This document shows positions 12,406-43,140 of a DNA stretch of 64,000 nucleotides, one piece after another. The notes beneath the pieces were generated by a model, which saw only the letters and a list, made by a program, of their open reading frames with translations, was not told where the DNA came from and did no database searches. A program made the translations under genes and the position numbers. Each line of letters starts with the position of its first letter. The first letter of the stretch is position 1. Origin of the DNA: Ostrea edulis (taxonomy: Eukaryota); contig NC_079171.1 in assembly GCF_947568905.1 (NCBI RefSeq), forward strand, positions 8,866,001 to 8,930,000, read 5' to 3'.

Positions 12406-12422
12406 GAAATGAAAACGAAAGT
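12406..12422 (+). promoter_or_regulatory. IRF-binding element / ISRE upstream of TRIM-b
   Basis: GAAATGAAAACGAAAGT fits GAAANNGAAA; 19 nt upstream of ATG 12442; conserved in paralogues. Confidence 0.6.
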
Positions 12423-12441
12423 TGATTTGTCATTTATAAAG

Positions 12442-14316
12442 ATGGCAACATCCCTAGACAGTTCTTCGATGGAGGATGTTACATTGTGTTCTATATGTTT
12501 CGAAAAGTTCAAGTCGCCGAGGTTTTTACCGTGTACACATTCCTTCTGTCACGGTTGTTTATCTTCCTACATTGTTAATGTGTGTAAATCTACAGAGTTT
12601 CGTTTGGGATTTAATTGTCCATTATGCCGCGAGTACATACCCTGTCCTGGTGCATTCGATAAGCCAGATGCGTGGGCGGGGTTATTTCCGTTCAATGAAA
12701 TTTTAGAGACAATCGTTAAGAAACCTGATGGGAAATTATGTGATGCCTGTTTACGAGAAAACGAAAGTGAAAATGCTATCGGGTTTTGCTTGTCTTGTAC
12801 TGAATATTTATGCAAGATGTGTACCAAATATCACAAAAGGCAATTGCTCTCAAGAGATCATACCATATGTCAACTGAACGAGATGAAATCTAGCAACATA
12901 TTTCCCGAATCAGGGAATATCCATAGCTGCCCAAAACATAAAAGGGAAACTGTCAAATTCTTCTGTAATGATCACCAGCAGTCCTGTTGTTCAGTGTGTA
13001 TAGGAACAAGTCACAGAAAATGCGAAAGTATTGATACTGTTGAAGATGCAGCAAAAAATATAAAACAAAATCGCCAACTGGATGTTCTTTTAGGTGATAT
13101 GAAGAACATGGAAAAGAAACTGACAAAAGCAAAGAGCGAACAAGAGATAAATGTAGCAGAAATAGAGAACTCAGTGGACGAAATCATAGAGAAAACAGAA
13201 AGGGAATTCAAGGAACTTGTTGATCACCTAGACATACTGAAGAACAAACATTTAGATGAGGTAGCAGGTGCGCTGAAGAAAGGAAGGGGGAAGTTAAGTG
13301 AATGTACAAATGTACTTACTGATGGTATACAGTGTACAAATTACTGCTGCCGGAATATTAAAAGAGTTAAAGAGACTGAGAATGACGCTGAAATGGTGAT
13401 GACGTATTACAGAGTGAAAGAGAGGCTCTTACAGCTGAAACAGTTTAAATGCACGAAGAAACAGATAACGATATCTGAAGTGAAGTCACAAATTTTGAAA
13501 GAAGTGAGAAATATGGAATCTTTTGGAGATATTGAATATGCTGAGTCTGATTTTCGCATCACGTACGATGTAAATGACATTGCGTTATCTTTAGTTAATG
13601 AATTCAGCATTGATGGAGAAAATCCGATTGTGTGGACTGGGCATTTTCTGTCCAATGGTAACTTTGTATTTGCAGACTACATACCTGATGGCCGTTGTTT
13701 TATTTATAACAAAGACTGGAAATCCACGGAAGTCATTGATGGACTGAGTTACCCTTTTGAAGCAATACAAGCTGGAGAAGAACTACTGGTGACGTGTGAT
13801 GGAACGAAGTCTATAGAAGTTTTTTCTTTGTCTGATTTACATTAACTGCGAAGTATCAATATCAACGAAACAATGTATGGAATAACACAACACAATGGAA
13901 TTTGTTATGTAGCATGTGGAAATAAGATTATAAAATTGAATCTGTCTGGTAAAAAGCTTAGAGAATATAAAGTCGAAGACAATTACAATATTCACATAAG
14001 TACAACAAAAGATGGACATATTGTGTACAGTAACAGTTCCCTGAATACAGTGACCGCCATCACGGACCAGGGAGACACCGTGTGGCAGTATAAACATATC
14101 AAAATGAGAGTACCCCGTGGACTTGATGTAGACTCTGTCGGTAATATCTTTGTTGCCGCTAGAGGAAGTGACAATATCCACGTGTTGTCTGGCGCTGGCT
14201 GTCTCGTTAGGATTATCGAGGATATTCCACAGCCAATGTTTATTAAACTAATGGAAGAGAGGAGTATATGTTGTGTGTGTAGCAATCGTAGAATCATGAA
14301 AGTGTATAAATTGTAG
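12442..14316 (+). pseudogene. TRIM-b: intronless TRIM E3 ligase (RING, 2 B-boxes, coiled coil, NHL-like propeller) with one in-frame stop
   Basis: ORFs 12304-13845 and 13873-14316 are in the same frame; TAA at 13843-13845 is AAA (Lys) in TRIM-c; 624 aa if read through; C3HC4 RING CSIC..CTH..CHGC..CPLC. Confidence 0.92.
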
Positions 14317-14696
14317 AATTTGTTAATTTTGTCGTAATAAAATATTCAGAAAAAAATCAACATTAATGTTTATATGAAAATTGTCTTATCCATATACATT
14401 GCTAGTATTACCTTCATTCTAGTAAACTTTGTTGTCTCACAATAATACTAATGAGTATCAGCTGTAATTTTTTCTGCCTTAAATTACAGGCACATTACAC
14501 CGTTTTTCAGATAAAAGCAAAGGTTAGCCTAAAATTCTTGATGAGGAATGGAAAATTCCTTCTTAACTTTCAACATAATAAATACCGTGAATGGTACGGA
14601 GAAGTCAAGGTGGGATTTTAAGACTTAAAATTCATAAACTAAAAATTGTCTAAATAAATTTGCCTAAACTCCGATTTCTTAAAGGGGTGGAACTCA

Positions 14697-15240
14697 TCGG
14701 TTTAATTCATAACTTTTACACTTTTATTTTTCTCTTTCACTACTGCTATCCAAAATAATGGTAGAGACGACAGTAGGCACCCAATTATAATCCATCTTTA
14801 TTTTCATATGTAGGGGATCACAGATTTTGGATTTTTTTTTTAGCATAAACAATTTTTGGTCTGGTCTATCTAATTGTCCAATTAGTTCTGTTATTGAAGT
14901 TAATGTGAAGATTTGCTCCTGTGTCAATGCTTTAAACTATGGATACAATGCAAGATATATGGCATCTTACATGGTTCGTGATTTGATACGATTTATATTC
15001 AACGAGTTGTGTGTTTTCTATCCCTGAGACACAAATCATAAGATGTTTTTTTTATCACATGTTAACCCCTAAGGCTATTCATTTACATTACTGTAGCGTT
15101 GATAATTTTACTTCTTGACATGTAAAATTGACGTTTATTTGTGACGTCACAAACGGTGTAGGAAATAATAGTCTATGTAGTGGCATATCCATTAGATACA
15201 GGAGTAAACATCTGATAAATGTAAGTATTTAATCGTGGAC
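14697..15240 (+). repeat. Intergenic blocks W+X (match about 36401-36560 and 36830-36895, and 1-330)
   Basis: aattcataacttt...ttcactactgc, catctttattt..tatgtagggga and atttgctcctg are shared. Confidence 0.7.
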
Positions 15241-16759
15241 AACATACTGACCGGAATGGACTGATGTGTGATGATAATTTGAATATTTCTTCATGTGGGA
15301 CAGAACCTGTTGACATTTTCATTCTACATAATACTCTAAATCAATACAATTTGTCATTCTTTCTGTTTTAATGTCTTAGGAATAATTTAATGTTGCATGT
15401 ATTACGTTTTCACGGATAACTAGAATGGGATAAATGATAAAATCACAGAAACAAATTACATATTTATTTGGCATACAACTAAAATTTAAGTTTCTGATCC
15501 CGTTTTATGGCGTTGAGCATAAGCTTCCTCAAAGGCGTCTGGCTTAAACTCAGATCCACTATGCTTATGACTGCTGTCATACGTAGACACAACACGTATA
15601 TCGATGCTCCCCATTGTTTGGTTTTCATACTTTTGTACTTGGTACACGTGTACTTAGTACACACTACAAGGTAGCACCTACGACAATAAAGTCATATAAA
15701 CGTACACATACACACAAGTATTCAGGTTGAAACCTTACTTTACATTATCCATGGATAAATCCCAGCATATACCGTTATACATATTAGTTACTTCATATTA
15801 TTATGAAAAAGAAAACCGGTATCGAAACAACCACACAACACATAACTAAATAAAGATCGTTGGAAGCTTTAGGACCTTTTTAACAAAGGAAATACTATAT
15901 AAAGATCATTACATAAAAATCTCCTCCGAACAAGCTGAAAACGGGCAACATTTACAACAAAGTCAAAGTGTCTGCAATAGTTATTTTGTAATTGCTGTCA
16001 TAACATTCTGGTGAAAATGTGCTCAGATGAATGCATCAATCTTGCATGACAGTTCGATTCCTACTGAGAGCACGGACTGGTGGTTTTATGCTCCGGTAGA
16101 TTGGGGTTTAATAAAGGGGTATTTACAATTTAAAAGAGGCCCCAAGCAGGATAAAGCTACGTTTGGTTTGACAAAACAAAAGTGAACTAAAAATGAACAT
16201 ACGAATAAGATTTAACGTGACATACATCATGTCAATGTTTGTATGTATACTATTGACAGTTATATGTACAAAGTGAGAAAACTCAAGAGATAATGTCATT
16301 GTACTGCCTCGTACTCCCAGACAGGATAAAACATTAAATTCATACATAAACTGTTAGTCTGTATGTTCGGATTTTGCAATGGTAATAGTTTACTGTTTGA
16401 AACAAGGTTTATATCTCAATCACTGTCTGATATGAATGAAACGAAGAAGTCGTCAGTGCTATTTCACCCATATATTCTTTATTTGTATTGTGTATTGTTG
16501 ATGTAGTACTGTTTTTGTTGTGTGAAAGCTACGTAGGGATATTAACATGGAACGGAAGTGAATAGATACGAAAGGGCAAATATACCTATTGATTATAAAT
16601 GTAAAAATTACTGGTCGATTATTCGTTCATTTAAATAGGTTTATTTATCAATGATGAAGCATGTAAAACTCTAGTAAACTCGCTAGTTACATCCAGATTA
16701 GATTACGGAAATGCATTGAATTATGATGTTCATTCTCAACACACCAGCACATTTCAGAG

Positions 16760-17437
16760 GGCACAAAAACAGCTGTAATATTAATAACACGCTCAAAAAT
16801 AATTCGACCATATTACTCCTGTTCTAATAGATCTTTAGTGGTTCCCAGTTGAATACAGAATTGAATATAAGATACCTCTTCATACTTTCAAATTTCTCCA
16901 GTTTACATAAAGGATATCCTTGCAGTTTACAATCCCACAAAATCACTAAGATCCGAATCTCTGCATCTTTTCGAGGTACCTCGGACACGTACGAAAACAT
17001 TTGGGAATTGACGGTTAGACAAGGCTGCATCGAGTATCTGGAACTCGATGTCTTTTAAACTCAGACAATGTCCTTCGCTGTCTAGTTTTAAAGTGGACCT
17101 CAAAACGCATCCATTTTAGATTAGCTTTTAATTTGTGATTATTTTGATATACTTAGTGCCCTTACATACAAAAATCCTTTGTCGTTTTTTATTACACCTA
17201 TGTACTTTCTATGTATTTAATTATTACTATGGCTTGTTTTAAATTGTTTCATATGTTATTAGGGTAATCATATCATTACATTAGGCGCTATATATTGATA
17301 TAATAATTATGCATTTTAATTCTGACACTATGAATATTTTATTCACATGTATGTGCAAATTCTCTTTCACATTTGTAAAGAGAACTAATGTTGATAGGGC
17401 GCTATATAAATCGTTTCATTACAATTACAATTACAAT
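16760..17437 (+). mobile_element. 3' fragment of an L2/CR1-type LINE
   Basis: Translates as HITPVLIDL*WFPVEYRIEYKI and LRQCPSLSSFKVDLKTH, typical of L2 ORF2 C-termini; ends gcgctatataaat plus an (ATTACA)n tail. Confidence 0.75.
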
Positions 17438-17543
17438 TAACATGGAACGGAAGTGAATAGATGCGAAAAAGCGAATATACCAATTTATTATAAATGCAAA
17501 CATTACCGGTCGATTCTAAGTCTTAAAAAATAAATATATTGTC

Positions 17544-17731
17544 TTAATGGTTATTTTAGTGTATATATATCAACCCATGTGATGCTGGATCTTATTGGTT
17601 GTTTTAGTGTATCTATATTAACACATGTAATGCTGGTTCTTATTGGTTATTTTAGTGTATCTATATCAACACGTGTGATGCTGGATCTTATTGGTTATTC
17701 TAGTTTATCTATATCAACACCTGTGATGCTG
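17544..17731. repeat. 48-bp minisatellite, about 4 copies
   Basis: Unit ttattggttattttagtgtatctatatcaacacgtgtgatgctggatc at 17592, 17640 and 17688. Confidence 0.85.
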
Positions 17732-18671
17732 TTTTCATTTTTTATTTCATTTCTTATTTGGACTAGTTTGTGATCTGTTTATCGGTAATAGATTAGAAGA
17801 TTTATTTATCTAGACAAATTTGCCTGTACATATTAAGACATTCACATTTACGAAGGTTAATTTGTATGTTTGACAAGTGGTCAAAAGCCAAAAAAGGTTG
17901 CCACAAGGCTAAGGCAGGCCAGAAGGGGCACAAGTAAAGTTACACAGGTTGCCATGAGGCTAGGACTGATTAGCATCGGCGGAATTATTGACCCCCCCCT
18001 ACAATTTTCAAAGTATGTTACAAATCACTGCATACTATAAAAAGAAGTAAAATCAAATCATATCTATAATAATTGATTCTAAAAGGTGAACGTCAAAATA
18101 CACAAAGTCTATAACTCCGTATTTTACATAAGTAGAAGAAATGTACACACATAAATGAATAACTGTATAAAGATTCCGAGTTGATCATATAGATATTTTC
18201 AATAGAAATACTAATATGCGTTTCTTGAGAGTTGTTTATATATACCATGGTTTAATATTTTGCAGCCCCCCCCCCCTCCCCGAAATCATGCATTATTTTT
18301 TTATTGGCTATTATTAATTTTTTTCCAAATCTAGTTTTTATTTTAAAAACGAGAAACATATTTTGAGGCAAGAGACGTAACATGCTAGGAAAAGATGTAA
18401 GGGTGGATCCAGAAGATAGGGGTCCAGTCGATGGGTCCCCTCCCCCTTTGCGGAAAAAAAGTAAAGTTATTCAATTTTAAGGAGACTTCGCGTCAAAATG
18501 ATGTGAATGGTGGATATTTGCATGTAATAACATCATTCAAATTTATCAACACCAGCATATCATTTAATTCCCCGATGAATAAGACGAAATACTCCTATAT
18601 ATTTAGATTTATATTTCCCCCCTAAAATAACTCTAAAAGTTCATTTTTATTTCGGATTTCAAACATTTGGG

Positions 18672-18723
18672 TTGAGCATCACTGAAGAGACATTATTTGT
18701 CGAGTGCACATCTGTTGCATCAA
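18672..18723 (+). ncRNA. Degenerate hammerhead motif (GAAA reduced to GAG), dispersed copy
   Basis: TTGAGCATCA-CTGAAGA-GACATTATTTGTC-GAG-TGCACA-TC-TGTTGC. Confidence 0.55.
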
Positions 18724-18979
18724 AATTGGTAACGTATAAGTTTTACATTTATGATATTTTCGTTAGATTCAAGTACATCTATCCCATAAAATTCTTAAAC
18801 AGTATATGCAACATAAAAGTTTCCTTCAAGGAGGTATGCTTCACTATGGAAATTTGATATGGATAAAAGTGTTGGATATGTACAACAATATTTTGAAATT
18901 GAAAACTTTCAAATTTACTTTATTTAGTCAAAAAATACAACTTTAGTTGAAAGTACTCTGAGAAAAATTCAAAACCCTG

Positions 18980-19045
18980 TTGGACTCGAACACGCAATCT
19001 ACCATTCAACAGTCGATGTGCGAACCTACTGAGCTACTCAGTTAG
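18980..19045 (-). mobile_element. tRNA-derived head (Pol III A/B boxes) inside a repeat
   Basis: Reverse strand reads TAGCTCAGTAGG...GTTCGAGTCC; no complete cloverleaf. Confidence 0.5.
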
Positions 19046-20221
19046 GCAAGAATGTTTTAAATCAATAGACAAATATTGCTGATATTTATATTTTTATCCA
19101 TGTTTTAAAAGGACGTCAGCCATTGTGATGATGTAGAGAACCTCCTTAAGAAGCAGAAAATTGAAAAGTGAAAAAGAAGTCCAGGAAATCCTCAGAATGC
19201 AGGATTTTACACCATTTACAGCAGAGCCTATTGAGAGTAACCTTTGAATCGTTTTTTTTAAAGATTTTATATAAAATCTGAATATATGGATAAAAATGAC
19301 TAGAACGCGAGAAACAAATAGTAAAACGAAAGCAAATAAATGTATAAACTGTCCGAAGATCTCCCTAAAATGTTATGTACACAAGCAAAAAAGGTGTAAA
19401 TGAGTGGGGTTGGAGATTGTGAAAAATAACTAAAAGATCGATCAAGTGCTAGACCACCCACCACCTTCACAAATTCCTGGATCCGCCTATGAGGTGTGAG
19501 TAGGGGGGATTGAATTCCAAGAAATACAAACAGATGGACTAAAATCACAGCTCAATGTCGAGCAAATAAGTTTGATTAGACAAAAAAATCAACGGGTGAT
19601 AAATTTTGCCTCATTTGAGTAGTGATAAAGGTGTGTTTGTAAGAGGGGGTGTAACTTTACCTGTGAAGGCTAATTCCATGGTTCAATTTTACTCTTAAAA
19701 TTACTAACATTCAGGAGCTCCCGAGGGATTCGATTCCGGGGCCCCACCAGAGCTTTGCCTTGGACCAACTAGGGGCTTTAGGGCGGCCCTCGACCCCCTG
19801 TCTCTGGAAACAAATTCCACGCCCCCCAACCAGAATTCCAGGATCCACCCCTGATTAGGAGGGACATCGACAAGGTTACACATTTTCCAAACCACTGAAA
19901 AATCAAATGGATACAAAATCGATATAATGGACTTTGATTTGGTATGAAGTTGTGGCCAAGGTTAAGGTTTGTGTCAAGTTGCACCGTCAATTATTTATTT
20001 GAAATAGCCAAAATTTAAAAATAATCCGATTTTCAAATTTAAACCAATCCCCATAGGAATTATTTTAAAAGTTGTCATAAAGAATATGGTAATCAAAAAA
20101 CTACATGCCCTTGATATAAAAAGAAAATTGAAATGAATTTATCAAAATATCTTCATGAAAAGGGCATGACATTAACAACAATTTGATTTAGTATATTCTA
20201 TCAATTTTGATCGGAATTGGT

Positions 20222-21268: not shown

Positions 21269-21357
21269 TATCTAATTTGACTGAAATCTAAAAATCAAAA
21301 TAGCAATATTTCTTAAGTTTGATCATTTCATTTTAATTTCCTTTGATATGTATTTGT

Positions 21358-21537
21358 CTGATATGCAAGGTGAAGATAACGAACAGTGATCAATCTCATA
21401 ACTCCTACAAGCAATACAAAATAGATAGTTGGGCAAACACGGATCCCTGGACACACCAGAGGTGGGATCAGGTGCCTAGGAGGAGTAAGCATCCCCTGTT
21501 GACCGGTCACACCCGCCGTGAGCCCCATATCCTGATA
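21358..21537 (+). mobile_element. Repeat family A copy (further copies about 27368-27570 +, 34420-34530 -, 39560-39625 -, 45146-45212 +, 45870-46072 +, 56008-56140 +)
   Basis: ggtgaagataacgaacagtgatcaatctcataactcc...gggcaaacacgga.ccctggacacaccagaggtgggatcaggtgcctaggaggagtaagcat. Confidence 0.85.
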
Positions 21538-23280: not shown

Positions 23281-23289
23281 CTACAAATC

Positions 23290-24379: not shown

Positions 24380-24864
24380 GATGTTGCAAAGATTCTACAA
24401 GGAGTACAGTATCACTATTTTTAAAATTGTTATTTCTAGTGTTTATATTTAACAGGATCCAAACCTTTAGATAGACTATACCCGACCTTAAATGCACTCA
24501 ATCTTGAAAAAAAATCTTAATAAGATAGAAATATTATATTCCAGTAATAGATAAACATTGAAAAATATATATGTTTACATGCTACATATTTGATATAATT
24601 CAAACCTTAACAAAATCAAATTACACTTATTTATGTCCCGCTGAGATTTCCATGTCCCTAGAAATTGTCCCGTTTCTACACGCCGAGGTTGGCTTCGGAT
24701 ATTTTACACTCTGGATCTACAAGGAGGACAGTGAAATGTATGCTTTATGTGCTTGTTGGCAATGACAACGTGGACAATCGACACTTCATCTACAAACACC
24801 ACAGTGTAATATTCCATGGTTTAAAAAAATAGAACGCCGAGCTTACAGCGGGTTCGCCGAATTT

Positions 24865-24881
24865 GAAATGAAACCGAAAGT
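24865..24881 (+). promoter_or_regulatory. IRF-binding element / ISRE upstream of TRIM-c
   Basis: GAAATGAAACCGAAAGT, 19 nt before ATG 24901. Confidence 0.65.
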
Positions 24882-24900
24882 TGATTTGTAATTTATAAAG

Positions 24901-26768
24901 ATGGCAACATCACTAGACAGTTCTTCGATGGAGGATGTTACATTGTGTTCTATATGTTTCGAAAAGTTCAAGTCGCCGAGGTTTTTACCGTGTACACATT
25001 CCTTCTGTCGCGGTTGTTTATCTTCCTACATTGTTAATGTGTGTTAATCTACGGAGCCTCGTTTGAGATTTAATTGTCCATTATGCCGCGAGTACATACC
25101 CTGTCCTGGAGCCTTCGATAAGTCAGACGAGTGGGCGGGGCTATTTCCGTTGAATGAAGTTTTAGAGGCAATCGTTCATAAGCCTGATGAGAAACTGTGT
25201 GATCCCTGTTTGCGAGATAACGAAAATGAAAATGCTACGGGGATATGTTTGTCATGTACTGAATATCTATGTAAAATATGCACGAAACATCACAAAAGAC
25301 AACTGCTCTTAAAAGACCATATCGTATGTCAATTGAACGAGATGAAATCCGGTAACGTAATTCCCTCATCAGGAAATACCCACGGTTGCCCTGAACTGAA
25401 GAAACAATCAAATTCTTCTGTAACGATCACCAGCAGTCCTGTTGTTCAGTGTGTATAGGAACAAGTCACAGAAAATGCGAAAGTGTTGATACTGTCGAAG
25501 ATGCGGCCAAAAATATAAAAGAAAATGGCCAACTGGATGTACTTTTTGGTGATGTGAAGAACCTGGAAAAGAAATTGACAAAAGCAAAGAGCGAGCAAGA
25601 GAAGAATGTAGCAGAAATAGAGAACTCAGTGGACGAAATCATAGAGGAAACAGAAAGGGAATTCAAAGAACTTGTTGATCACTTAGAAATGCTGAAGAAC
25701 AGACATTTAGATGAAGTAGCAGGTGCGCTGAAGAAAGGAAGGGGGGAGTTGGGTGATTGTACAAATGTACTTATTGATGGCATACAGTGTACAAATTACT
25801 GCTGCCGGAATATTGAAAGAGCTAAAGAGACAGAGAATGACGCTGAGATGGTAATGACGTATTACAGAGTGAAAGAGAGGCTCTTACAGCTTGAACAGTT
25901 TAAATTCACGAAGAAACAGATAACGATATCTGAAAGAAAGTCACAAGTTCTGAAAGAAGTGAGAAATATGGAATCTTTTGGAGATATTGAATATGCTGAG
26001 TCTGATTTTCGCATCACATACGATGTACATGACATTGCGTTATCTTTAGTTTCTGAATTCAGCATTGATGGAGGAAATCCGAATGTGTGGACTGGGAATT
26101 TTCTGTCGAATGGTAACTTTGTAGTTGCAAATTGCAAATCTAATGGCACTTGTTTTATTTATAACAAAGACTGGAAATCCACGGAAGTCATTGATGGACT
26201 GAGTACCCCTTTTAAAGCAATAAAAGCCGGAGAGGAACTACTGGTGACGTGTTATGGAACGAAATCTATTGAAGTTTATTCTGCGTCTGATTTACATAAA
26301 CTGCGAAGTATCAATATAAACGAATATGTGTATGGAATAACAAAACACAATGGAGCGTGTTATGTAGCATGTGGAAATAAAATCATAAAAATTGATATGT
26401 CCGGTAAAAAACTGAAAGAATATAAAGTTGAATGGGGTACTATTAACATAAGTACAACACAACATGGACACCTTGTGTACAGTAACCATCCCCGTAATAG
26501 AGTAACCGCAATCACTGATCAGGGAGACACCGTCTGGCAGTATACACATCTGAAAATGATAGAACCCCATGGACTTGATGTAGGCTATATCGGTAATATC
26601 TTTGTTGCCGCTAGAGGAAGTGACAATATCCACGTGTTGTCTGGCGCTGGCAGTCTCATTAGGATTATCGAGGATATTCCACAGCCAGTGTTTATTAAAC
26701 TAATGGAGGAGAGGAGTATGTGTTGTGTGTGCAGTGGTTGTAAAATCATGAAAGTGTATAAACTGTAG
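24901..26768 (+). pseudogene. TRIM-c: TRIM pseudogene, closest paralogue of TRIM-b
   Basis: ATG at 24901; TAA at 25045-25047 (AAA in TRIM-b) inside the RING; 4-nt deletion at about 25396-25400 shifts the frame into ORF 25449-26768. Confidence 0.92.
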
Positions 26769-33440: not shown

Positions 33441-33603
33441 NNNNNNNNNNNNNNNNNNNNNNNNNNNNNNNNNNNNNNNNNNNNNNNNNNNNNNNNNNNN
33501 NNNNNNNNNNNNNNNNNNNNNNNNNNNNNNNNNNNNNNNNNNNNNNNNNNNNNNNNNNNNNNNNNNNNNNNNNNNNNNNNNNNNNNNNNNNNNNNNNNNN
33601 NNN
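33441..33603. other. Assembly gap (163 N)
   Basis: Run of n characters. Confidence 1.
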
Positions 33604-36589
33604 AATTACTGTAACCGAAACCGATTGTGTTGTTAGTTCACAACGTTATATGAATACCCATATCAAATGTCGACAAATATTTTCGCGCACGAAAAAATCT
33701 TACGGAGTACTTTATAGACTAACGTATTGTGTACATGGAACTAAATGGCTGTCCTCAACCTTTTGACAAGGTTTATTTTTCGTTATTTTACATGCAAATT
33801 GTGTTATTTTTACAGGCAAAATAAGATAAATGGTGGAGTTAGCCACCACTCCACTCATTTGATGGTACTAATGAAAATTAAATATTCAACCTTGACTGAA
33901 CTGATGAATTGAAAGACGAAGGGAGCTGACCTCCAATCAATTTAGGAGTATAAAGCTTGGACAAAAGAGAGATTTTGAGATTTTAGTTATGCTTTGTTAG
34001 CAATTCTAGAAGACAAATTCTCCTCCGGCTGTCCCAAAGCTTTAACAACTGATGCTACGAGTCTGTGGACTATTTTCAACTCTTACAAAACTAATAACTC
34101 AGTAGTACGAAGGTGTTTTTTTAATAGACAGCCGGCATGTATAAATTAAGGGACGGCTGCCATACAATTTAAGTGGTCACTGGTTAGATAAATGACGGTC
34201 GCAAATTAAACCATGTGCCAACCGCCAGATCAATTAAGTGGCAGTTACCAGTTACATTAAGTTGGCGAAAACTCATAATATTGGATGTATAGAAATATAG
34301 AAACATACATATGGTTTGTTGTTGTGATGAGATTATTTTATTTCATTGATTAATGAATTTAAAGAGTTGACTTTGTATTGATTGATTCAATAAACAAGCT
34401 GTTGTTGTGTTTGACCATACACCCGATCCTACCCTGGCGTGTCCAGGGGTCCGTGTTTGCCCAACTCTATATTTTATATTCCTTATAAGAGTGATGAGAT
34501 TGATCAATGTTCGTTATCTACACCTTTTCATTTAAAAACTTTAACAATAATAATTCCTTCTTAAATCGCATGGCATCAGCCATTTTCCGAGGTGCGTTAT
34601 TGTTAATCAGGTTTGCCATTAGATAACTGTTTCACTCCTGAGTTTATTGGATGTTTGTATTGTCATTCATGTATTGTGATAATCTTTTTTTTTTTACCTC
34701 TGATAACTGTGAATTAATAATGTAACAGAAATTAACTGCTTCACCTTCGGAAAATCCACAGCTCTATTTAATTTTCATTATTTAAATTCCGTGTCTCTAT
34801 CTAAACTCCACAGCTCTATTTAATTTTCTCTATTCAAATTCTGGATTTCTATTTGAATCCCACAGTTCTATTTAATTTTCACAATCTAAATCCCGCATCT
34901 CTATCTAAATGTCACTGTTATATTCAAATTCCACAGCTCCATTATTTAGAATGGCACGGCCCTATTTAATTTAATTGATTATGCTTTATGCTTATTATAC
35001 GTTAAATATTTTCAGCAGGACTTGACACAAACAATTAAATGAACGTGTGGATGTCTGATGATGCCTGGACAGGTAATAAAGCTATTAGTGGGTTGTATTT
35101 ATTTATTCATTTCTTTTTTGTAATATACACAAACAGTACATTTCATAAGAAATACTGTTTATAACATGGCTACAGTGTTCTCAGTTTTGCATTTTAACTC
35201 GGACCCTGGTCAACAGGACCGGTCACCAGGTAGAGTTACCGGTCCTGCACCAAAATTGTTCGTCCTACTCGCGACTCAAAATATGAAATATGTGCTGTAT
35301 AACTTGTCAATCTTTCGCATTATCATTTTTTCATATGGCTGAATCAAATAAAATTATCTCCATTTTCCAAAATTCTTCTTTCAAAAATGATAAGAGTGGT
35401 CAGCTCAAGGCCATTAATAATTACATCAATCTCTTTGAAAAACTCTGGAAGTTTACAACTACATGTAGAATATAATTATATTCATTATAAGAGTCATAAT
35501 ACCTTCTGTTTTAAACTGGAGACACATAAAATCGTGTTTCAAAGGAGAGTGGGGAATGGGGAAGTCGGAAACTTTGCCTGCTTAAAATTCCTTATAAACA
35601 ATTAAAAATGGCCGAGTTTCGAAATCTTAAATTGTGGGCGCATGGGATGGGGAAATAAAGGGGATTTGAAGACTTCATGAACTAAAACAGCTAAAATTTT
35701 ACCTGAATATCATACTATTTCAGTGTAAATGAAATTATACATTTTCTAAAAGAAAATGATATAGCTTAATTATCTTTGCATTTTGCTGATAAACAAAAAT
35801 AATGGAGCGATAAGCATTATTGAGTAAACACGACAAGTCGACAGTAATTACGGACACTTGCAGGTTGCTCGATAGATAATGCACAGATGTTAGAAATAAC
35901 TTGTGTACGTGGTCAGTGGGTAAGGATGCACTAACTGACCACCGGGGTCAGTTCAGAAATAAGTAGCTTCTCACATAGAGTCAGGGAGATGAGGATGCTG
36001 AATTCCCATATTAGGATAAGCGTTATTTAAGAATAATAATAGGTGGAATAAAAACGCGCGCAAGGCGAACAGTCGTCAGAATTCCTTGGCTAAATTCTGA
36101 CGAAGTCTTGCTGTTTTTAGGTGCTGAGGACGCTATACATCAAAGTTAACGGGTTAGACTTTTCGCATTCGAATTGAGATTGGTTCAGTGGTCATCGCTA
36201 AAGGAATTTATTTAGTTTATAATCCATAAAGGGAGACTGAACTTGTATTAATTCCATTGACCTAAGACCCTCTAATTATAAAGAATACCCAGAATACAGA
36301 AAATTCATAAATATCATAACAAGAGAATAAACGCTATTATATAAACTTCAAATCCTCAAATCAGTGGCGAAGGGGTTGGGGGTACTCAGACTTCGCTACA
36401 TGGGTTAAATTCATAACTTTCCAGCACATATTATCATTCACTACTGCCATCAAAATATGGAATTTGGAGACTAGAGGTAGCAGTCCCAATACATCTTTAT
36501 TTCCTATGTAGGGGAAAAAGATTTGAAATTTCAATTTATACTTTAAAAATAAACAATTTTGATTGTGCTCTTTCTAACTGTAGAATAGA

Positions 36590-36830
36590 TCCCCAGTATC
36601 CCTTGCTTGTCGTAAGAGGCGACTAAATGGGGCGGTCCTTCGGATGAGACCGCAAAAACCGAGGCGCCGTGTCACAGCAGGTATGGCACAATAAAGATCC
36701 CTCCCTGCGCAAAAACTGTAATCGCCGAGCATAAACCTAAATTTTGCAACACTTCACCGGCAGTGGTGACGTCTCCATATGAGTGAAATATTCTCGAGAG
36801 GACGTTAAACAATATTTAATCAATCAATCA
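36590..36830 (+). mobile_element. 5'-truncated SINE sharing its central domain and tail with the 20769 SINE
   Basis: cccttgcttgtcgtaagaggcgactaaa...gtgtcacagcaggtatggcac.ataaagatccctccctg...ggtgacgtctccatatgagtgaaa...(AATC)n; it splits block W from block X. Confidence 0.8.
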
Positions 36831-37617
36831 GTCTAACTGATCTTGCTATTTAAATCAATATGAATATTTGCTCCTGGGTTAATGTTAGAAGTGGAAGTAT
36901 TTGTTTTTGTGCAATAGGGAAGCTCCACCTCAATGCAATTTTGTACACCCACATTCTGTCTTTAAAATGAAGGAATTTGTCATTTCGTTCTCCGGTTCGA
37001 GATGAGTTCTTATTCAGCCGAACACTTATCTAATCTATGTGTGCCTGTTATGTACATGTATGTTTCTCCTTAACCACAGGGTCACAGTCAGATAATTTTA
37101 TAAACTTAAAGCATTTAGGCACGGATCTAGTAAAAATCAATTTCAGGAAGCGAACTCCTCCATCTAAAAAAAAAATCATAATTGAAATTGAATAGTTTGC
37201 GAATAAATCTAGTGTTTCTAATTTTGGAATATCAATACATTAATCAACTGTCACCCACGTATCACCGTGTTAAATCATTCTTTATATAAATAGAAACCAA
37301 ACCTTAACCAGCACCCCGCCCCAAAAAAGGATTAGGCATATTTATGTCCCACATAGCTTTCCATGTCTCTGAATATTCTGCCTACGTCACAGTTTTGTCC
37401 CGTTTCTGAAGACATTTTCAGTGTGTGTTTTCTGCACGTCGATGTTGCGGACATTGTATTCTCTATATCTACACGGACAGTGAAATTTATGATTTATGTG
37501 CTTTTTGGCATGACAACGTCGACCATCGACTCTTCATTTACAGATGTAAACATAATGTGTTCCATTTGTTTCGAAAAAGAAGTTGAACGCCGAGGTTACG
37601 ACAAATTCGTCGAATTT

Positions 37618-37634
37618 GAAATGAAACCGAAAGT
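37618..37634 (+). promoter_or_regulatory. IRF-binding element / ISRE upstream of TRIM-d
   Basis: GAAATGAAACCGAAAGT, 17 nt before ATG 37652. Confidence 0.65.
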
Positions 37635-37651
37635 TGATTTGTAATATAAAG

Positions 37652-39513
37652 ATGGCAACATCACTAGACAGCTCTTCGATGGAGGATGTTACATTGTGTT
37701 CTATATGTTTCGAAAAGTTCAAGTCGCCGAGGTTTTTACCGTGTACACATTCTTTCTGTCACGGGTGTTTATCGTCCTACATCGTGAGCTTGTGTAAATC
37801 TACGGAGACTCGTTTAGGATTTAATTGTCCATTATGCCGTGAGTATACGCCCAGTCCTGGCGCCTTCGATGAGCCAGACGAGTGGGCGGGGCTTTTTCCT
37901 GTGAATGCAATGTTGAGGAAAATTGTAGACAAATCAGACCAATTGCTTTGTGAGCCATGCTTGAGAGAAAAAGAAGAAGAGGAGGCCTCGGACTACTGCT
38001 TTTCATGTTTAGAACATTTATGCAAAATGTGTACGAAGTACCACAGGAAGAATTTGTCGTCACGAGACCACAAAGTATCTCCATTGAATGAACTGAAATC
38101 GGCGAACAGAAGATCCATTGTTGATATCTCAAACAGCTGTGCCACGCATAAGGATGAAAAGGTTAGGTTATATTGCTTTGATAACGAACAGCCCTGTTGC
38201 GCAATGTGTGGTGGCATGGAACATAGGAAATGTGAGCAGTTTGATACTATTGAAAATGTTGTACGTGTTTTTAAGGAAAGCGGCAAGGTTGACTCCATTA
38301 TGGATGATGTAAACAAGTGTAAAAGTAAATTAGAAAATGCCAAAAACGAAGAAGAGAAGAATATAACGAAAATTCGGTTGATGAAATGATAGCAAGATCG
38401 GAAGAGGATTTTAAAACTCTCCTTGACCACTTGCAGAAATTGCAACAGGAACATATAGAAGAAATATCCAGTTCTCTGAAGAAAAGCAAGGAAAAATTGT
38501 AAACATGCATAGGCACCTTAACGGACGGAATACAATGTGCAGAGTATTGCAGCAAAATGTTTGAGCAAGCCAGAATCAGTGAAAATGAAACGGACTTCAT
38601 GATGAAGTTTCATACGTCAAAAATAACGTACGAACATTTAAAACACGTGAATTTTTCACGAAAGCGCATCATGATTTCCGCAAAAAAAGATCCTATTTTG
38701 ACGGAAATCGTGGATATGACAGCTCTTTCTGACGTTCACCATACTGAATCCTCTCGTCAACTTTATTTTGATGTTCGAACTGTAGAAATGTCTTTGATAA
38801 AGGAATTTAGCATTGATGGGGATGTCGTGTGCGATGGTATATTTCTGTCTAATGGCACTTTTGTGATAGCGGATTACAGAGATGATGGGAAATGCATGTT
38901 TTTTGACAAACATTGGGTCCCCAGTATATTTGGTGAAAGTCTTAAGAAACCATTTGGTTTGATAGAAAACGATGAAGAAGTTCTTGTGACTTGCAGCGGC
39001 TCAAAAAGTATTGAAGTATTTTCTTCATCAGATTTACAGAAACTTCGAAGTATTCCCATGACTGAATCAGTTTTTGGAATAACAAACCGGAGGGGTGACA
39101 TATATGTTGCGTGTGGAAAGAAAATCATTAAAATCGATAGCGTGGGTAGGATATTGAAAATATACGATGTAGAAGGGGCAAATAATGTAAATATACTTGC
39201 AACAAACACTGGACTTATTGTGTACAGTGATTGGAAAATAGAAAAAGTGACAGCGATAACCGATCAGGGAGACATTGTCTGGAAGTATAAAAATCGTAAC
39301 CTGAAATGTCCATCTGGAATCGATCAAGACTCTGTCGGTAACATATACGTTACAGGAAGAGATAGCAACAACGTCCACGTGTTGTCTGGAACCGGGGAAC
39401 TTATTAGGGTGTTCGAAGACATCCCGAGCCCGACCTTCTTTAAATTAATTGAAGAGAGGGCCATTATATGTGCTTTTGATATATCAAAACGCATAAGAGT
39501 GTTTAAAGTTTAA
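37652..39513 (+). pseudogene. TRIM-d: TRIM pseudogene with a diverged B-box, coiled-coil and propeller region
   Basis: RING and B-boxes intact; about 7-nt deletion at about 38372 (coiled coil) causes a frameshift; in-frame TAA at 38500-38502 in the downstream frame; propeller ORF 38557-39513. Confidence 0.9.
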
Positions 39514-41006
39514 GTTTCCCAGGAACATGACATTACATTGATTCTGAACAACAACAGTCCTATTGTATATTGTATTCCTTATAGGAGTTACGAGATTGAT
39601 CGTGTTTGTTATCTTCACCTTTCCTATAAAATGTTAGCTGCGCTAATGCAGCCCTCTCCGATTCTTTCTTTCTTTCTTTTTGAGGGGGCTACAACTCCTT
39701 AGGATTTCCGTAATGGTGCAAATGCGAGAGTGATTCACTCCCGCAACATTTTTGATCATTTTAAACATTTGCTGACTTCCTTTACGTAATTGAAATTATA
39801 TTCTCTATTTCTTAGTCAATATATGAATTTACAACCTGCAACTTTTCGATGTATTCCAATTTATTGATTCATATTTGTGTGCCATCTTTGATGTACTGAA
39901 GTTTCAACTTCGAGTTGTCAAATTATTTGCATATGCCATATAAGGTAGTGTTTACATCAATGGACGAGCACGGAGGTGAAAGCGATTTCGTCGGTATTAA
40001 AATATCAAGTTAAAAATCAACAGCAGAGTGTACGTTTTTCGGCCACCACATGATTTGTTCTTTTTTGTCGGAATGACTCAAGTAACTACATTTTCGCGCT
40101 GATTGTCAATGTTGAGGTTTTTCAGTAGATTTACTGACGAGATCTCGCGATAATAAGAATGGCATAGCAAACCAAGAATCTTGAATGTTGTAAATATATT
40201 TCATTAAAAACACCTTTCTCAAACAATAATCAATCAATCATTCAAACATGCCCAAGCACAAAGTCGGTAGTATTTAGTGTGTAAACAACAGCATTGGATA
40301 CAAATACAAGGATTTTATTAAAGGTTATTCATTAAAAAAATATTGGCATCATTACGAAGATCTCGTGGACTTCTAGCCCTATCCTGAAAACGTCTGAATA
40401 AAAAAGGAGAGGATTAGATTATTGCAGCATATAAAATGTCAAACAATCTATTTAAAACATTCGTTGCTCATCAAAAACACTCAGGACATAGCGAATCAAA
40501 GTTGATATTGATAGAAATAAAAACATGTGAATTTGATATTAATCTTTTTTCCCGATTTAACCTTTTCAGAATGATTATCAGGCCCTTCCCTAACCTGTAA
40601 AATATGTAATTAAAGTGAATAAAGTATATCTTGACTGTATGTCATTTAACATTCAAAGGTAATTTTATGAAATTAGTCGTCACTATTTCTTGGTATCTAT
40701 TTTTCGCCGAAATATTAACAATTCGTAGTTAGCCATTTACGAAATTTGTCCCTGCATTATGTTTAAGCCCGGACTAAGAATGCAAGTTTTATCACTCGTG
40801 TATATACTTAGTTTTGCTCAGTCGGAAATATACGATAGAACAATCATATAGACGAAAAGTGATACTGCTTGCTGTGAAAAATACCATCAAGCCCATGACT
40901 CTTGTCCGTTCATACCGTGTTAGAGTTGAAATATCACATCAGAACAAAACGCACGCCATACAAGTGTAAATCAGATGTTCGTTATCTCCATTTGTTCATT
41001 CTTTTT

Positions 41007-41073
41007 AATTAACAACTGCAATTAATTAACAACTACAATTAATTAACAACTACAATTAATTAACAACTACAAT
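41007..41073. repeat. 17-bp tandem repeat, about 4 copies, just 3' of TRIM-e
   Basis: (aattaacaactacaatt)n. Confidence 0.8.
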
Positions 41074-41201
41074 ACTACAGAGAATCAAAGTTTCATATTT
41101 GTTCTTTATATCCAACATTTGAAGATATAGAAAAAAAATACTATTCTAATGTTCTGCATAAACTTCACTGTCATCACAACACTGAGAGAGGAGCGATGGG
41201 A

Positions 41202-43118
41202 TTATTTGAATTGGTACACTTTGATGTGTTTTCGATTGCTACACACGCAACATGTATTTCTCGCTTTGTTTATTTTCATAAAGTCTGGTCTCGGAATGTC
41301 CTCAAAAAGTCGAATTAATTTGCCTTCACCGGACAACACATGGACATTGTCACTGGATTTACCAGCGACATAGATATTACCATCAGAGTCCGTGTCAAGG
41401 CCACACGGAGATTTAAGATGTGGACTGTCGTATGTCCACGCGGTTTGACCTCCATCTGTAATCGCTGTTACGACGTGTTTTTTTCTGTTACTGTATATAA
41501 TGTGGTTTTTCGTGGCGACGATGTGCTTCACGCCAGTCTCTACACTGTACTCTTTCATTAATCTTTCATACTCGTTTATCTTCACGATTTTGTCATTGCA
41601 TGCACAGTATAAGTAAGCATCCTTCTTTGCTATTCCAAAGTTTTTGTGAAGACTGGTGAATTTCATATTTGATGATTTGGAATAAGAGTAAAGTGATACC
41701 CTTTCAATGGATCTTGAACCGTGGCATGCCACTAATAATTCTCGTGCCTTTTCACACAGACCGAAAGGTTCTGAAGACAAGTCAATGGATCTTGTGCACG
41801 CAAACACTTTGTTATAAAAGAAGCATTTACCATTGTTGCTCCTTTTACAACCCCGCCTTTTTGTCGACAGCCATGATAGAACGAACTCTCCATTTGATAA
41901 AAACGTACCATCACGTACGCAGCCTGCATCAATGCTAAAATCATTTAATAAAGATAACTCAACTCTTCTCAGATCAGACTTGACATCAAATAGGGACTCT
42001 GAAAATACTGCATCAGGAAAACTTTCAAGATCCATGATATCTTCCAAAATAGGATCCTTTCCTTCCTTAAGCCCTATGCGTATTTGTGTAAATTCGTAAT
42101 TTTTGAGTTGTTCAAATATTTTTCTGCTTTTATAGTACTTCACAACCATATCGATGTCATCCTGACTTTTTCTACAATCCTCAATATTTCTGTAACAGTA
42201 ATCTGTGCATTGAATTCCATCTGATAGCGTGTCTATGCATTTTTCGTATTTTTCTTTATTTCTCTTTACAGCGGTAGCCATTTTTGTTAGATACTCATTT
42301 TTCAGATGCTGCAAGTGATCGATAGCAACCCGAAATTCTCTCGTGGTATTCTCTGTAATCTGGTCTGCTTTATCATCCATTTCTGTAACGAACCTTTCTT
42401 GTTCCTTCTTTGCATCTACTAATTTGTTTTCAAGAATATGTATGTCTTCAGACAGGCTGTCGAAATTATGACTAAGAATCTCTCTGAGAGTCTCAGCAGT
42501 TTTCTTTATAGCATCAACACTTTCACATTTTCTGTGTTCCGTACTGACACACATTGCGCAGCATGGCTCTTCGTGATCGTTGCAAAATAGCTCTAGTTTT
42601 CTATCCTGATGTGTTGAACACATATTTTCTCTACCAATTCTCGGTGTAATATTCATTCCTTTCATTTTATTCACTGGTACTGTCTTATGGTCAAGTGTTG
42701 TTAGACTTCTTTTATGATATTTTGTACACAATTTGCACAAATATTCCATGCAAAAGAAACAAAAATCGGTTGCATACTCTACTTCGCTCTGTCGTAAGCA
42801 AGCCTCGCATTGTGTTTGTTCTGATTCCTGTAAAAGTTTTCCTAATACTTCGTTTTCAGGGAAAAGTTCTGCCCACTTCTCTGGCTCACCTAAGGCATTA
42901 TCAATGGGAATGTACTCACGGCATAATGGACAATTAAATCCCAAACGAGGCTCCGTAGATTTACACACATTATCAATGTAGGAAGATAAACACTTGTGAC
43001 AGAAGGAATGTGTACACGGTAAAAACCTCGGCGACTTGAACTTTTCGATACATATCGAACAAAATGTAACATCCTCCGTTGTAGAGCTGTCTAGTGAAAG
43101 TTGCCATTTTTCTATCAC
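41202..43118 (-). CDS. TRIM-e: TRIM E3 ligase with an uninterrupted reading frame but no in-frame AUG upstream of the RING
   Basis: 638-codon ORF with all domains. The ORF track starts at GTG; the ancestral ATG (43107) is out of frame because of an extra T (ATGGCAACTTTCA versus ATGGCAACATCA); first in-frame ATG is at 42749. Confidence 0.85.
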   Translation of the reverse strand: MIEKWQLSLDSSTTEDVTFCSICIEKFKSPRFLPCTHSFCHKCLSSYIDNVCKSTEPRLGFNCPLCREYIPIDNALGEPEKWAELFPENEVLGKLLQESEQTQCEACLRQSEVEYATDFCFFCMEYLCKLCTKYHKRSLTTLDHKTVPVNKMKGMNITPRIGRENMCSTHQDRKLELFCNDHEEPCCAMCVSTEHRKCESVDAIKKTAETLREILSHNFDSLSEDIHILENKLVDAKKEQERFVTEMDDKADQITENTTREFRVAIDHLQHLKNEYLTKMATAVKRNKEKYEKCIDTLSDGIQCTDYCYRNIEDCRKSQDDIDMVVKYYKSRKIFEQLKNYEFTQIRIGLKEGKDPILEDIMDLESFPDAVFSESLFDVKSDLRRVELSLLNDFSIDAGCVRDGTFLSNGEFVLSWLSTKRRGCKRSNNGKCFFYNKVFACTRSIDLSSEPFGLCEKARELLVACHGSRSIERVSLYSYSKSSNMKFTSLHKNFGIAKKDAYLYCACNDKIVKINEYERLMKEYSVETGVKHIVATKNHIIYSNRKKHVVTAITDGGQTAWTYDSPHLKSPCGLDTDSDGNIYVAGKSSDNVHVLSGEGKLIRLFEDIPRPDFMKINKARNTCCVCSNRKHIKVYQFK

Positions 43119-43124
43119 AATTCA

Positions 43125-43140
43125 ACTTTCGCTTTCAGTT
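43125..43140 (-). promoter_or_regulatory. IRF-binding element / ISRE upstream of TRIM-e
   Basis: Plus strand ACTTTCGCTTTCAGTT (minus AACTGAAAGCGAAAGT), 17 nt before ATG 43107. Confidence 0.65.

What the first reader, a model, noticed from the sequence alone, without database searches (positions are those of the whole stretch)
12406..43140. Conserved ISRE/IRF site 17-19 nt upstream of the ATG in four TRIM paralogues
Seen: GAAATGAAAACGAAAGT (12406), GAAATGAAACCGAAAGT (24865 and 37618) and AACTGAAAGCGAAAGT (minus strand, 43140-43125); TRIM-a has a decayed version (3841-3856). The GAAANNGAAA core survives while the NN spacer and flanks change (AC, CC, GC), as expected for a constrained IRF site. 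Established: bivalves have IRFs and a poly(I:C)-inducible antiviral response, and many vertebrate TRIMs are ISGs. Inference: this is an IRF-inducible, ISG-like antiviral TRIM cluster in an invertebrate.
Basis: partly seen in the sequence, partly recalled or inferred. Interest (0 to 1): 0.8.

Follow-up and report, generated by a model that had tools for sequence, protein, structure and literature searches.

The report
IRF-like motif before oyster TRIM genes
Every copy of a tandemly repeated TRIM ubiquitin-ligase gene in the flat oyster carries the same interferon-regulatory-factor-like DNA motif just before its start codon; the motif shows some sign of selective constraint, but virus inducibility remains untested.

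Summary
GAAANNGAAAGT lies 17-19 nt before the ATG of TRIM-b, c, d and e, with a decayed copy before fragment TRIM-a. The window is Ostrea edulis chromosome OX387711.1. Seven more paralogues fetched from the same cluster of at least 350 kb carry the motif. Neighbouring windows of this scan noted it too (s1-301806, s1-301965, s1-287779).

The four copies are not independent. They sit in a 5' module (-140 to +270) that evolves in concert across paralogues.

Three results still point to sequence-specific constraint:
- Across 11 copies, the 8 GAAA..GAAA core columns have 0 of the 25-27 leader substitutions (P about 0.01).
- All 4 changes inside the motif fall on one spacer base.
- The 10-mer ACCGAAAGTT recurs once per locus, less than 100 nt before the ATG and in antisense orientation, in a distant O. 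edulis paralogue and a Crassostrea gigas homologue.

Three points count against a simple ISRE-promoter reading:
- The TSS is unknown, and the motif probably lies in the transcribed leader.
- It contains an upstream ATG.
- The full bipartite site is absent from Saccostrea and Crassostrea relatives.

No expression or binding data could be obtained. My verdict is a plausible IRF-type cis-element (about 0.4). IRF inducibility is unproven.

The parts
12406..12422 (+). IRF-E/ISRE-like motif of TRIM-b (GAAATGAAAACGAAAGT), 19 nt before ATG 12442. Its internal ATG (12409) is in frame with the main ORF.
   Evidence: gene call P0020 starts at 12409
24865..24881 (+). Motif of TRIM-c (spacer C), 19 nt before ATG 24901. 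It forms a 7-codon uORF ending in TAA.
37618..37634 (+). Motif of TRIM-d (spacer C), 17 nt before ATG 37652. It forms a uORF ending in TAA.
43125..43140 (-). Motif of TRIM-e (AACTGAAAGCGAAAGT, spacer G), 17 nt before ATG 43107. The upstream ATG is replaced by CTG.
3841..3856 (+). Decayed motif of the gene fragment TRIM-a, with a 7-nt deletion that removes AGTTGAT.
12442..14316 (+). TRIM-b, an intronless RING/B-box/coiled-coil/NHL-like gene. It has a nonsense codon at 13843-13845. Its 98.1% identical paralogue L012 has AAA at that place.
24901..26768 (+). TRIM-c, with a frameshift (net 4-nt deletion) at about 25397-25401.
37652..39513 (+). TRIM-d, with a frameshift at about 38366. Contigs of two DNA runs carry 7 extra nt there, which keeps the frame.
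41202..43107 (-). TRIM-e. The ATG is out of frame because of one extra T at about 43097-43099. That T is absent from contigs of two DNA runs and from paralogue L6b.
3869..4415 (+). TRIM-a, a truncated and frameshifted gene fragment.
37543..37597 (+). 'Shadow RING' of TRIM-d: a degenerate copy of CDS +33..+83. It ends about 20 nt before the motif. All copies have the equivalent.
   Evidence: (score 46 against a shuffle maximum of 27)
12392..12441 (+). Conserved 50-nt leader of TRIM-b that holds the motif. High identity between close paralogues starts here, at about -48.
33441..33603 (.). Assembly gap, intergenic between TRIM-c and TRIM-d. It is not part of the element.

Best explanation
The string TGAAA-N-CGAAAGTTG is a DNA-level cis-regulatory element of the IRF-E/ISRE type. 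It lies in the proximal promoter or 5' leader of an intronless TRIM (RING/B-box/coiled-coil/NHL-like) gene family, which is tandemly amplified over at least 350 kb of O. edulis chromosome OX387711.1.

Shown:
- The motif is present in all 11 full-length copies examined.
- Its GAAA cores never change, while one spacer base changes repeatedly.
- A 10-nt part of it recurs near the start codon of distant family members, in either orientation.

Inferred:
- An oyster IRF binds it. Oyster IRFs activate vertebrate ISRE reporters.
- Binding raises transcription of the array after viral nucleic-acid sensing, as TRIM families do in C. gigas.

The copies were spread by tandem and segmental duplication. They are kept alike partly by concerted evolution of the 5' module.
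For: - The sequence matches GAAANNGAAA(G/C)(T/C) at all sites.
- In 11 copies, 25-27 parsimony changes fall in the leader -50..-1. None falls in the 8 core columns (P about 0.01 under uniform rates). The 4 changes inside the motif all hit the first spacer column, which is the most variable column of the leader.
- CGAAAGTTG is the longest invariant run in the 340 nt upstream.
- ACCGAAAGTT occurs exactly once in each of L013 (21.9 kb, expected 0.07) and L008 (5.9 kb, expected 0.01). Each time it is within 100 nt upstream of the TRIM ATG and antisense. That fits a DNA element better than an RNA element.
- An ISRE-like string inside the coding sequence (12757-12773) is not kept across paralogues, which serves as an internal control.
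- Literature: CgIRF2 and CgIRF8 are induced by poly(I:C) and activate human ISRE and IFN-beta reporters (PMC5557890). TRIM multigene families are among the genes induced by poly(I:C) or OsHV-1 in C. gigas (PMC7064767; PMC6971885).
Against: - There are no expression, TSS or binding data. The only candidate RNA runs are marked 'RNA?' as a guess. Their contigs run colinear through the motif to at least 189-225 nt upstream, which would place the motif well inside the 5' UTR.
- The start codon MAT... is conserved across genera, so the site is at most 36 nt from it. That is unusual for an ISRE.
- The whole module from -140 to +270 is homogenised, with third-codon-position identity of 0.83-0.94. Conservation therefore need not mean selection on the motif.
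- The full bipartite site is absent from S. cucullata, S. echinata and C. gigas relatives.
- The shared 10-mer was chosen after seeing the data.
- The left GAAA is altered in e, L6b and L5.
Confidence: 0.4

Rival explanations
1. Passive inheritance. The motif is simply part of a leader copied with every tandem or segmental duplication and kept uniform by gene conversion together with the adjacent RING-coding segment. Its likeness to an ISRE is a chance property of an A-rich leader, and it has no regulatory role.
For: - All copies are paralogous, and about 300 nt upstream is alignable.
- The 5' module is 4-5 times less diverged than the gene bodies, and synonymous sites at +1..+180 are 83-94% identical.
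- The flanks of the motif are almost as conserved as the motif.
- ISRE-like strings arise by chance in this DNA, for example in the TRIM-b coding sequence and in the ORF at 58507.
- Saccostrea relatives lack the motif.
Against: - Homogenisation predicts uniform low variation. It does not predict 0 changes in 8 core columns next to a column with 4 changes (P about 0.01).
- It does not explain the single ACCGAAAGTT close to the ATG in non-alignable upstream regions of L013 and the C. gigas gene.
Confidence: 0.3
2. A transcription-factor site, but not an IRF site. The constrained part, (A)CCGAAAGTT(G), is bound by another factor. One candidate is a PRDM1/Blimp-1-like zinc-finger repressor, whose consensus (A/C)AG(T/C)GAAAG(T/C)(G/T), cited from memory, fits AGCGAAAGTT of e, L6a and L6b. 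An unknown family-specific factor is also possible. The genes need not be virus-inducible.
For: - The part shared with distant homologues is the right half plus flanks (ACCGAAAGTT), not the bipartite GAAANNGAAA.
- The left GAAA varies: GAAC, GTAC and AAAA in e, L6b and L5.
- The second spacer base C and the 3' TTG are invariant, which IRF recognition does not require.
Against: - No test of any factor was possible.
- AANNGAAA, the minimal IRF recognition unit, is satisfied in the cluster and in C. gigas.
- The PRDM1 consensus fits only the G-spacer copies.
Confidence: 0.18
3. A translational control element. The ATG inside the motif opens a 7-codon upstream ORF (MK[T/P/A]KV[D/G]L) that ends 10-12 nt before the main ATG and damps translation of the TRIM mRNA. 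Alternatively, the leader acts as an RNA element.
For: - The motif contains an ATG in 9 of 11 copies. A TAA stop follows in frame in 7 of them.
- In b and L012 the uATG is in frame, and gene callers use it as the start.
- The possible RNA contigs include the motif.
Against: - The uATG is lost in e and L6b (CTG), and the stop is lost in b and L012.
- The variable base is a first codon position that changes the residue, while third positions are invariant. There is no coding-type constraint.
- No stable or shared RNA fold was found (z from -1.0 to +0.8).
- The related 10-mer is antisense in distant homologues, which an RNA-level element would not tolerate.
Confidence: 0.12

Closest known systems
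Vertebrate ISRE / IRF-E (PRDI-like) elements of interferon-stimulated TRIM genes, such as the mammalian TRIM5/22/21/25 group and fish finTRIM arrays
   Same: The tandem GAAA half-sites have a 2-nt spacer and a (G/C)(T/C) tail. They lie close to the start of RING/B-box/coiled-coil E3 ligase genes. Those genes form fast-evolving tandem arrays with divergent C-terminal domains.
   Different: - Here the site is 17-36 nt from the ATG and probably inside the leader, not 50-200 nt upstream of a mapped TSS.
- The C-terminal domain is NHL-like, not B30.2/SPRY.
- No interferon, ISGF3 or induction has been shown.
- The tail is GT, so it matches the IRF-E form and not the ISRE GAAACT form.
- Consensus forms are cited from memory.
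Invertebrate IRF target sites: the shrimp Vago promoter (PMC4602278) and C. gigas IRF2/IRF8 acting on ISRE reporters (PMC5557890)
   Same: Invertebrate IRFs recognise GAAA-repeat elements and are induced by virus or poly(I:C). That makes an IRF-type site in a bivalve gene mechanistically plausible.
   Different: The oyster assays used human ISRE and IFN-beta reporters in HEK293T cells. I found no native oyster TRIM promoter element described in the library searches.
PRDM1/Blimp-1 sites that overlap IRF sites
   Same: The core GAAAG(T/C)(G/T) preceded by AG(T/C) fits the G-spacer copies (AGCGAAAGTT).
   Different: It fits only 3 of 11 copies fully. The consensus is recalled from memory and was not tested.
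Short regulatory upstream ORFs in 5' leaders
   Same: There is an upstream ATG in good context (A at -3), a 7-codon ORF, and a stop 10-12 nt before the main ATG.
   Different: It is not kept in 4 of 11 copies, and there is no peptide or codon-type conservation.

Membership tests
ISRE / IRF-E (IRF-binding element) | Sequence GAAANNGAAA with a (G/C)(T/C) tail | tested here: met
   met in all 4 window sites and all 11 full-length cluster copies. The extra upstream GAAA has 1-nt spacing and varies.
ISRE / IRF-E (IRF-binding element) | Constraint on the core positions beyond neutral drift, with free spacer positions | tested here: inconclusive
   0 of 25-27 leader changes fall in the 8 core columns (P about 0.01), and 4 changes fall on one spacer column. 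However, the whole 5' module evolves in concert. Outside the cluster only a 10-mer part is shared, not the bipartite site.
ISRE / IRF-E (IRF-binding element) | Position in the promoter within about 200 bp of the transcription start | not testable with these tools
   No run on record as RNA holds the stretch. All laid runs are contigs, which cannot show transcript starts. The contigs of the 'RNA?' runs extend at least 189-225 nt upstream of the ATG through the motif.
ISRE / IRF-E (IRF-binding element) | Bound by an IRF or an ISGF3-like complex | not testable with these tools
   Needs EMSA, DAP-seq or ChIP. The literature shows only that C. gigas IRF2 and IRF8 activate human ISRE reporters (PMC5557890).
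Interferon-stimulated-gene-like (virus or dsRNA inducible) gene | Transcript level rises after viral infection or poly(I:C) | not testable with these tools
   No O. edulis RNA runs were served. There is only family-level evidence from C. gigas (PMC7064767, PMC6971885).
TRIM / RBCC E3 ligases | N-terminal RING finger | tested here: met
   zf-C3HC4 and zf-RING_UBOX score above their cut-offs in TRIM-e and TRIM-b. TRIM2, TRIM3, TRIM25 and TRIM56 RING structures match.
TRIM / RBCC E3 ligases | B-box zinc finger(s) followed by a coiled coil | tested here: met
   zf-B_box scores 32.1 and 30.6 bits against a cut-off of 24.1; residues 10-250 of the intact paralogue P0004 align with the solved RBCC of TRIM28 (E 5e-14) and with TRIM25 RING to coiled coil (E 2.5e-7).
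TRIM-NHL subclass | C-terminal six-bladed NHL beta-propeller | tested here: inconclusive
   Only weak hits were found. NHL repeat scores E 2.7e-4 as a whole-protein hit, with no single stretch passing; SBBP and Vgb_lyase score below their cut-offs. The TRIM2 NHL domain scores E 0.002. No structure was predicted.
Regulatory uORF | Upstream ATG and in-frame stop kept in all members | tested here: not met
   the uORF is intact in 7 of 11 copies. The ATG is CTG in e and L6b, and the stop is lost in b and L012.

The most novel reading that the evidence does not exclude
The element is a native molluscan IRF response element that has accompanied this TRIM family since before the Ostrea-Crassostrea split. 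The shared ACCGAAAGTT lies near the ATG in either orientation. On this reading an IRF-to-TRIM regulatory link, and an ISRE-like cis-code, predate vertebrate interferons and drive a whole amplified TRIM array at once.
Probability: 0.25. Interest if true: 0.6.

Novelty: new member of a known kind. Interest (0 to 1): 0.42.

Why it matters
Work on the oyster 'interferon-like' response has relied mostly on human ISRE reporters. The library searches made here found no native cis-element described for an oyster TRIM gene.

This motif is fixed and precisely placed in dozens of paralogous TRIM genes, and a 10-nt core is shared with Crassostrea. That gives a concrete probe and reporter target for asking whether bivalve IRFs drive an ISG-like programme through the same DNA code as vertebrates.

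If it is functional, one factor could switch on a whole fast-evolving TRIM array. That bears on resistance of farmed oysters to OsHV-1. If it is not functional, the case shows how concerted evolution of a 5' gene module can mimic a constrained binding site.

Tried and rejected
- **RNA evidence.** The look-up of sequencing runs gave no run on record as RNA. The two 'RNA?' runs are contigs 95-99% alike, from another organism label. They cover only parts of TRIM-d-like genes and a high-copy repeat, so they show neither TSS, strand nor induction.
- **RNA structure of the leader.** MFE z-scores run from -1.0 to +0.8 and the folds are inconsistent. Rejected.
- **TATA box.** TATAAAG at -9..-3 would put the TSS inside the coding sequence. 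The MAT... start is conserved in Saccostrea and Crassostrea, and the box is degenerate in e, L6b and L4. Rejected.
- **Splice acceptor.** TTCATTTACAG at about -115 looks like a 3' splice site. The C. gigas homologue appears to have a 5' UTR intron (L008, about 834-916), but I found no conserved donor in O. edulis. Left open.
- **Origin from the shadow RING duplication.** The shadow ends about 20 nt before the motif. By eye it also holds a shadow ATG and leader, where GTGAAAT is kept but the GAAANCGAAAGT part is not. This was not quantified.
- **C. gigas Logan contigs** (SRR606..., SRR322878) look like genomic DNA, so they give no 5' UTR evidence.
- **Literature.** Searches for locus names and for O. 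edulis TRIM45-like expression found nothing.
- **Not run.** I did not use the large protein-representative search or structure prediction, because the protein family was settled by Pfam, PDB and named homologues.


Full report
**1. What is there**

The pattern GAAANNGAAAGT occurs 7 times in the window against 0.43 expected. Four hits are the reported sites. Each lies 17-19 nt before the ATG of an intronless TRIM-like gene: b (ATG 12442), c (24901), d (37652) and e (43107, minus strand). A fifth copy, the gene fragment a, has a decayed version with a 7-nt deletion.

The proteins carry RING and B-box domains above the Pfam cut-offs and weak NHL/beta-propeller signals. The intact paralogue P0004 aligns over residues 10-250 with the solved RBCC of TRIM28 and with TRIM25.

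The best protein hits identify the window as Ostrea edulis chromosome OX387711.1. The relatives are named TRIM45-like or Midline-like in O. edulis, Saccostrea and Crassostrea gigas.

**2. The gap**

The N run at 33441-33603 lies in intergenic AT-rich DNA. It is 6.7 kb after TRIM-c and 4.0 kb before the TRIM-d motif. The only ORF across it is made of N. It affects no motif or gene. It leaves only the linkage of the a-b-c and d-e blocks dependent on scaffolding. I did not fill it.

**3. The copies are not independent**

The upstream 300 nt is alignable in all copies. I fetched seven more full 5' ends from the same chromosome, between 8.456 and 8.810 Mb: two in L001, one each in L004, L005 and L012, and two in L006. 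All carry the motif at the same place.

Earlier first-reader notes report the same motif in windows up to 377 kb away. So the scan has seen this before on neighbouring DNA of the same cluster.

Mean pairwise identity among seven lineages peaks at +21..+180 (0.93-0.99). It falls to about 0.70-0.75 in the gene body, is 0.79-0.89 over -60..+20, and is about 0.5 beyond -140. Third codon positions are 83-94% identical in the first 180 nt against 50-69% later.

For the deep pairs b-e, b-d and d-e, the gene body is 56-59% identical. Yet -140..-1 is 67-90% identical and +1..+270 is 83-87% identical. Branch lengths for the d and e clades are several-fold shorter in the 5' module tree than in the body tree.

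The 5' module therefore evolves in concert, by gene conversion or nucleotide-level constraint. The motif sits on the shoulder of that peak. Simple 'conservation in four paralogues' is not evidence of a constrained site.

**4. Evidence that there is site-specific constraint nevertheless**

- In the 50-nt leader, Fitch parsimony gives 25-27 changes on either tree. None falls in the eight GAAA..GAAA columns, where (42/50)^25 is about 0.013. Four fall on the first spacer base, which takes A, C and G and differs even between near-identical sister copies (b/L012 against L1b, and d against L6a). It is the most variable column of the leader.
- CGAAAGTTG is the longest invariant run upstream of the ATG.
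- An ISRE-like string inside the coding sequence of b, L012, L1b and L1a (12757-12773) is not kept in the other paralogues. Such strings do drift when they are only coding.
- Outside the cluster the full GAAANNGAAA is absent. I checked three S. cucullata genes on each of two contigs, one S. echinata gene and two C. gigas genes.
- The 10-mer ACCGAAAGTT, however, occurs exactly once in the 21.9-kb locus of a distant O. edulis paralogue on another chromosome (L013, expected 0.07). It also occurs once in the 5.9-kb C. gigas contig of LOC105346970 (L008, expected 0.01). It is conserved in that gene's alleles and in a related Crassostrea contig, L015. Each time it lies 36-96 nt before the ATG and in antisense orientation.
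- One S. cucullata gene has CGAAAGT at -37. With a background of about 0.008 per 100 nt, three proximal hits in eight genes is unlikely. The k-mer was chosen after seeing the data, though.
- Orientation independence argues for a DNA element over an RNA element.

**5. Where it lies relative to the transcript**

The start codon context ATGGC(A/G)AC (MAT...) is conserved in Saccostrea and Crassostrea homologues. Transcription must therefore start upstream of it. The TATAAAG at -9 cannot be the TATA box, and the motif is at most 36 nt from the ATG.

No run on record as RNA holds the stretch. Two runs guessed to be RNA give contigs 95-99% alike. These contigs cover only TRIM-d-like gene parts and a very high-copy repeat, not TRIM-e. 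They run colinear with the genome through the motif to at least 189-225 nt upstream of the ATG. If they are RNA, the motif is inside a long 5' UTR. They cannot show starts.

The motif holds an ATG. It opens a 7-codon uORF in 7 of 11 copies and is in frame with the main ORF in b and L012, where gene callers start. In e and L6b it is CTG. The variation pattern is not codon-like, and the leader has no significant fold.

Upstream of the motif lies a degenerate duplicate of CDS +33..+83, the 'shadow RING'. It ends about 20 nt before the motif.

**6. State of the genes**

In the assembly all five window copies are damaged:
- a is a fragment.
- b has a nonsense codon at 13843, where the 98.1% identical L012 has AAA.
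- c has a 4-nt deletion at about 25397-25401.
- d has a frameshift at about 38366.
- e has an extra T that puts its ATG out of frame.

Contigs of two DNA runs carry 7 extra nt after 38366 and lack the extra base at 43097. These contigs are nearer to d and e than to their paralogues L6a and L6b. The d and e lesions are therefore assembly errors or alleles of the reference animal. Intact 622-635-aa paralogues with the motif exist (P0004, P0005, P0006, P0039).

**7. Interpretation**

The best reading (0.4) is an IRF-E/ISRE-type cis-element in the proximal promoter or leader of each TRIM copy. It is inherited by duplication and kept by selection on top of concerted evolution.

Oyster IRF2 and IRF8 are induced by poly(I:C) and activate human ISRE reporters (PMC5557890). 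TRIM multigene families are among the genes induced by poly(I:C) or OsHV-1, or associated with resistance, in C. gigas (PMC7064767, PMC6971885). These are family-level facts from another genus, not tests of this locus.

The rivals are:
- passive inheritance with gene conversion (0.3);
- a site for another factor that recognises ACCGAAAGTT, such as a PRDM1-like protein (0.18);
- a uORF or other leader function (0.12).

The consensus sequences for IRF-E, ISRE and PRDM1 are cited from memory.

**8. Novelty and score**

An ISRE-like site before TRIM genes is a known kind of arrangement in vertebrates. Here it would be a new member in a bivalve. It is of interest because native IRF target elements in molluscs are scarcely described, and because the site is fixed across a whole amplified array.

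Without TSS, binding or induction data it remains a well-defined, testable hypothesis. Interest is 0.42.

Noticed in passing
window 12300-12710, 24760-25170, 37510-37920, 42840-43250 (about -140..+270 of each TRIM): The 5' module of the TRIM paralogues evolves in concert. Synonymous sites of the first 180 coding nt are 83-94% identical between copies whose gene bodies are only 56-59% identical. The sharp 5' edge lies at about -48 between close paralogues. The cause is gene conversion or an unknown nucleotide-level constraint on the RING exon.
   Followed up: partly
window 38366 and 43097-43099: The frameshifts of TRIM-d (7 nt missing) and TRIM-e (1 extra T) are absent from contigs of two other DNA runs. 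They are probably assembly errors or null alleles of the reference animal.
   Followed up: partly
window 39400-40200: A very high-copy repeat lies between TRIM-d and TRIM-e. Contig depth there is 300-1000 times the single-copy level in the DNA runs, with many internal joints. The element was not identified.
   Followed up: no
window 37470-37600 and the equivalent in all copies: By eye, the 'shadow RING' duplicate appears to extend 5' to a shadow start codon (ATGACAAC) and a shadow leader (GTGAAAT...). That suggests a tandem duplication of about 138 nt of leader plus first exon start. The shadow leader lacks the GAAANCGAAAGT part. Only the RING part was tested statistically.
   Followed up: partly
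window 58507-58530: The ORF 58507-59280 starts ATGAAGAAATTGAAAGTTGAT (MKKLKVD). This resembles the motif and uORF of the TRIM leaders (ATGAAACCGAAAGTTGAT, MKPKVD) and shares the 10-mer GAAAGTTGAT. It may be chance. The ORF lies in a region another note calls a transposase fusion.
   Followed up: no
window 12757-12773: A triple GAAA-NN repeat (GAAAACGAAAGTGAAAA) lies inside the B-box coding sequence of TRIM-b (residues ENESEN). It is shared only by the b, L012, L1b and L1a subgroup, so it is a coding-sequence look-alike of an ISRE.
   Followed up: yes
window 13873-14292 and 25449-26765: The NCBI protein model LOC130049596 (P0018, 569 aa) joins the tail ORF of TRIM-b to the post-frameshift ORF of TRIM-c. 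It is a chimeric model spanning two damaged paralogues.
   Followed up: partly
L006:10001-15431 against window 37652-43107: The tail-to-tail (convergent) pair TRIM-d/TRIM-e, with start codons 5455 nt apart, is duplicated as a block elsewhere in the cluster. L6a and L6b have starts 5430 nt apart, at 8.73 Mb. A b-like copy (L012) lies about 26 kb away, which indicates large segmental duplications.
   Followed up: partly
L008:831-916 (C. gigas LOC105346970 contig): There is an apparent short 5' UTR intron (CAG|GTAGGT ... TTTCATTGTAG|) about 90 nt before the ATG. Its acceptor resembles the conserved TTCATTTACAG at about -115 of the O. edulis copies.
   Followed up: no
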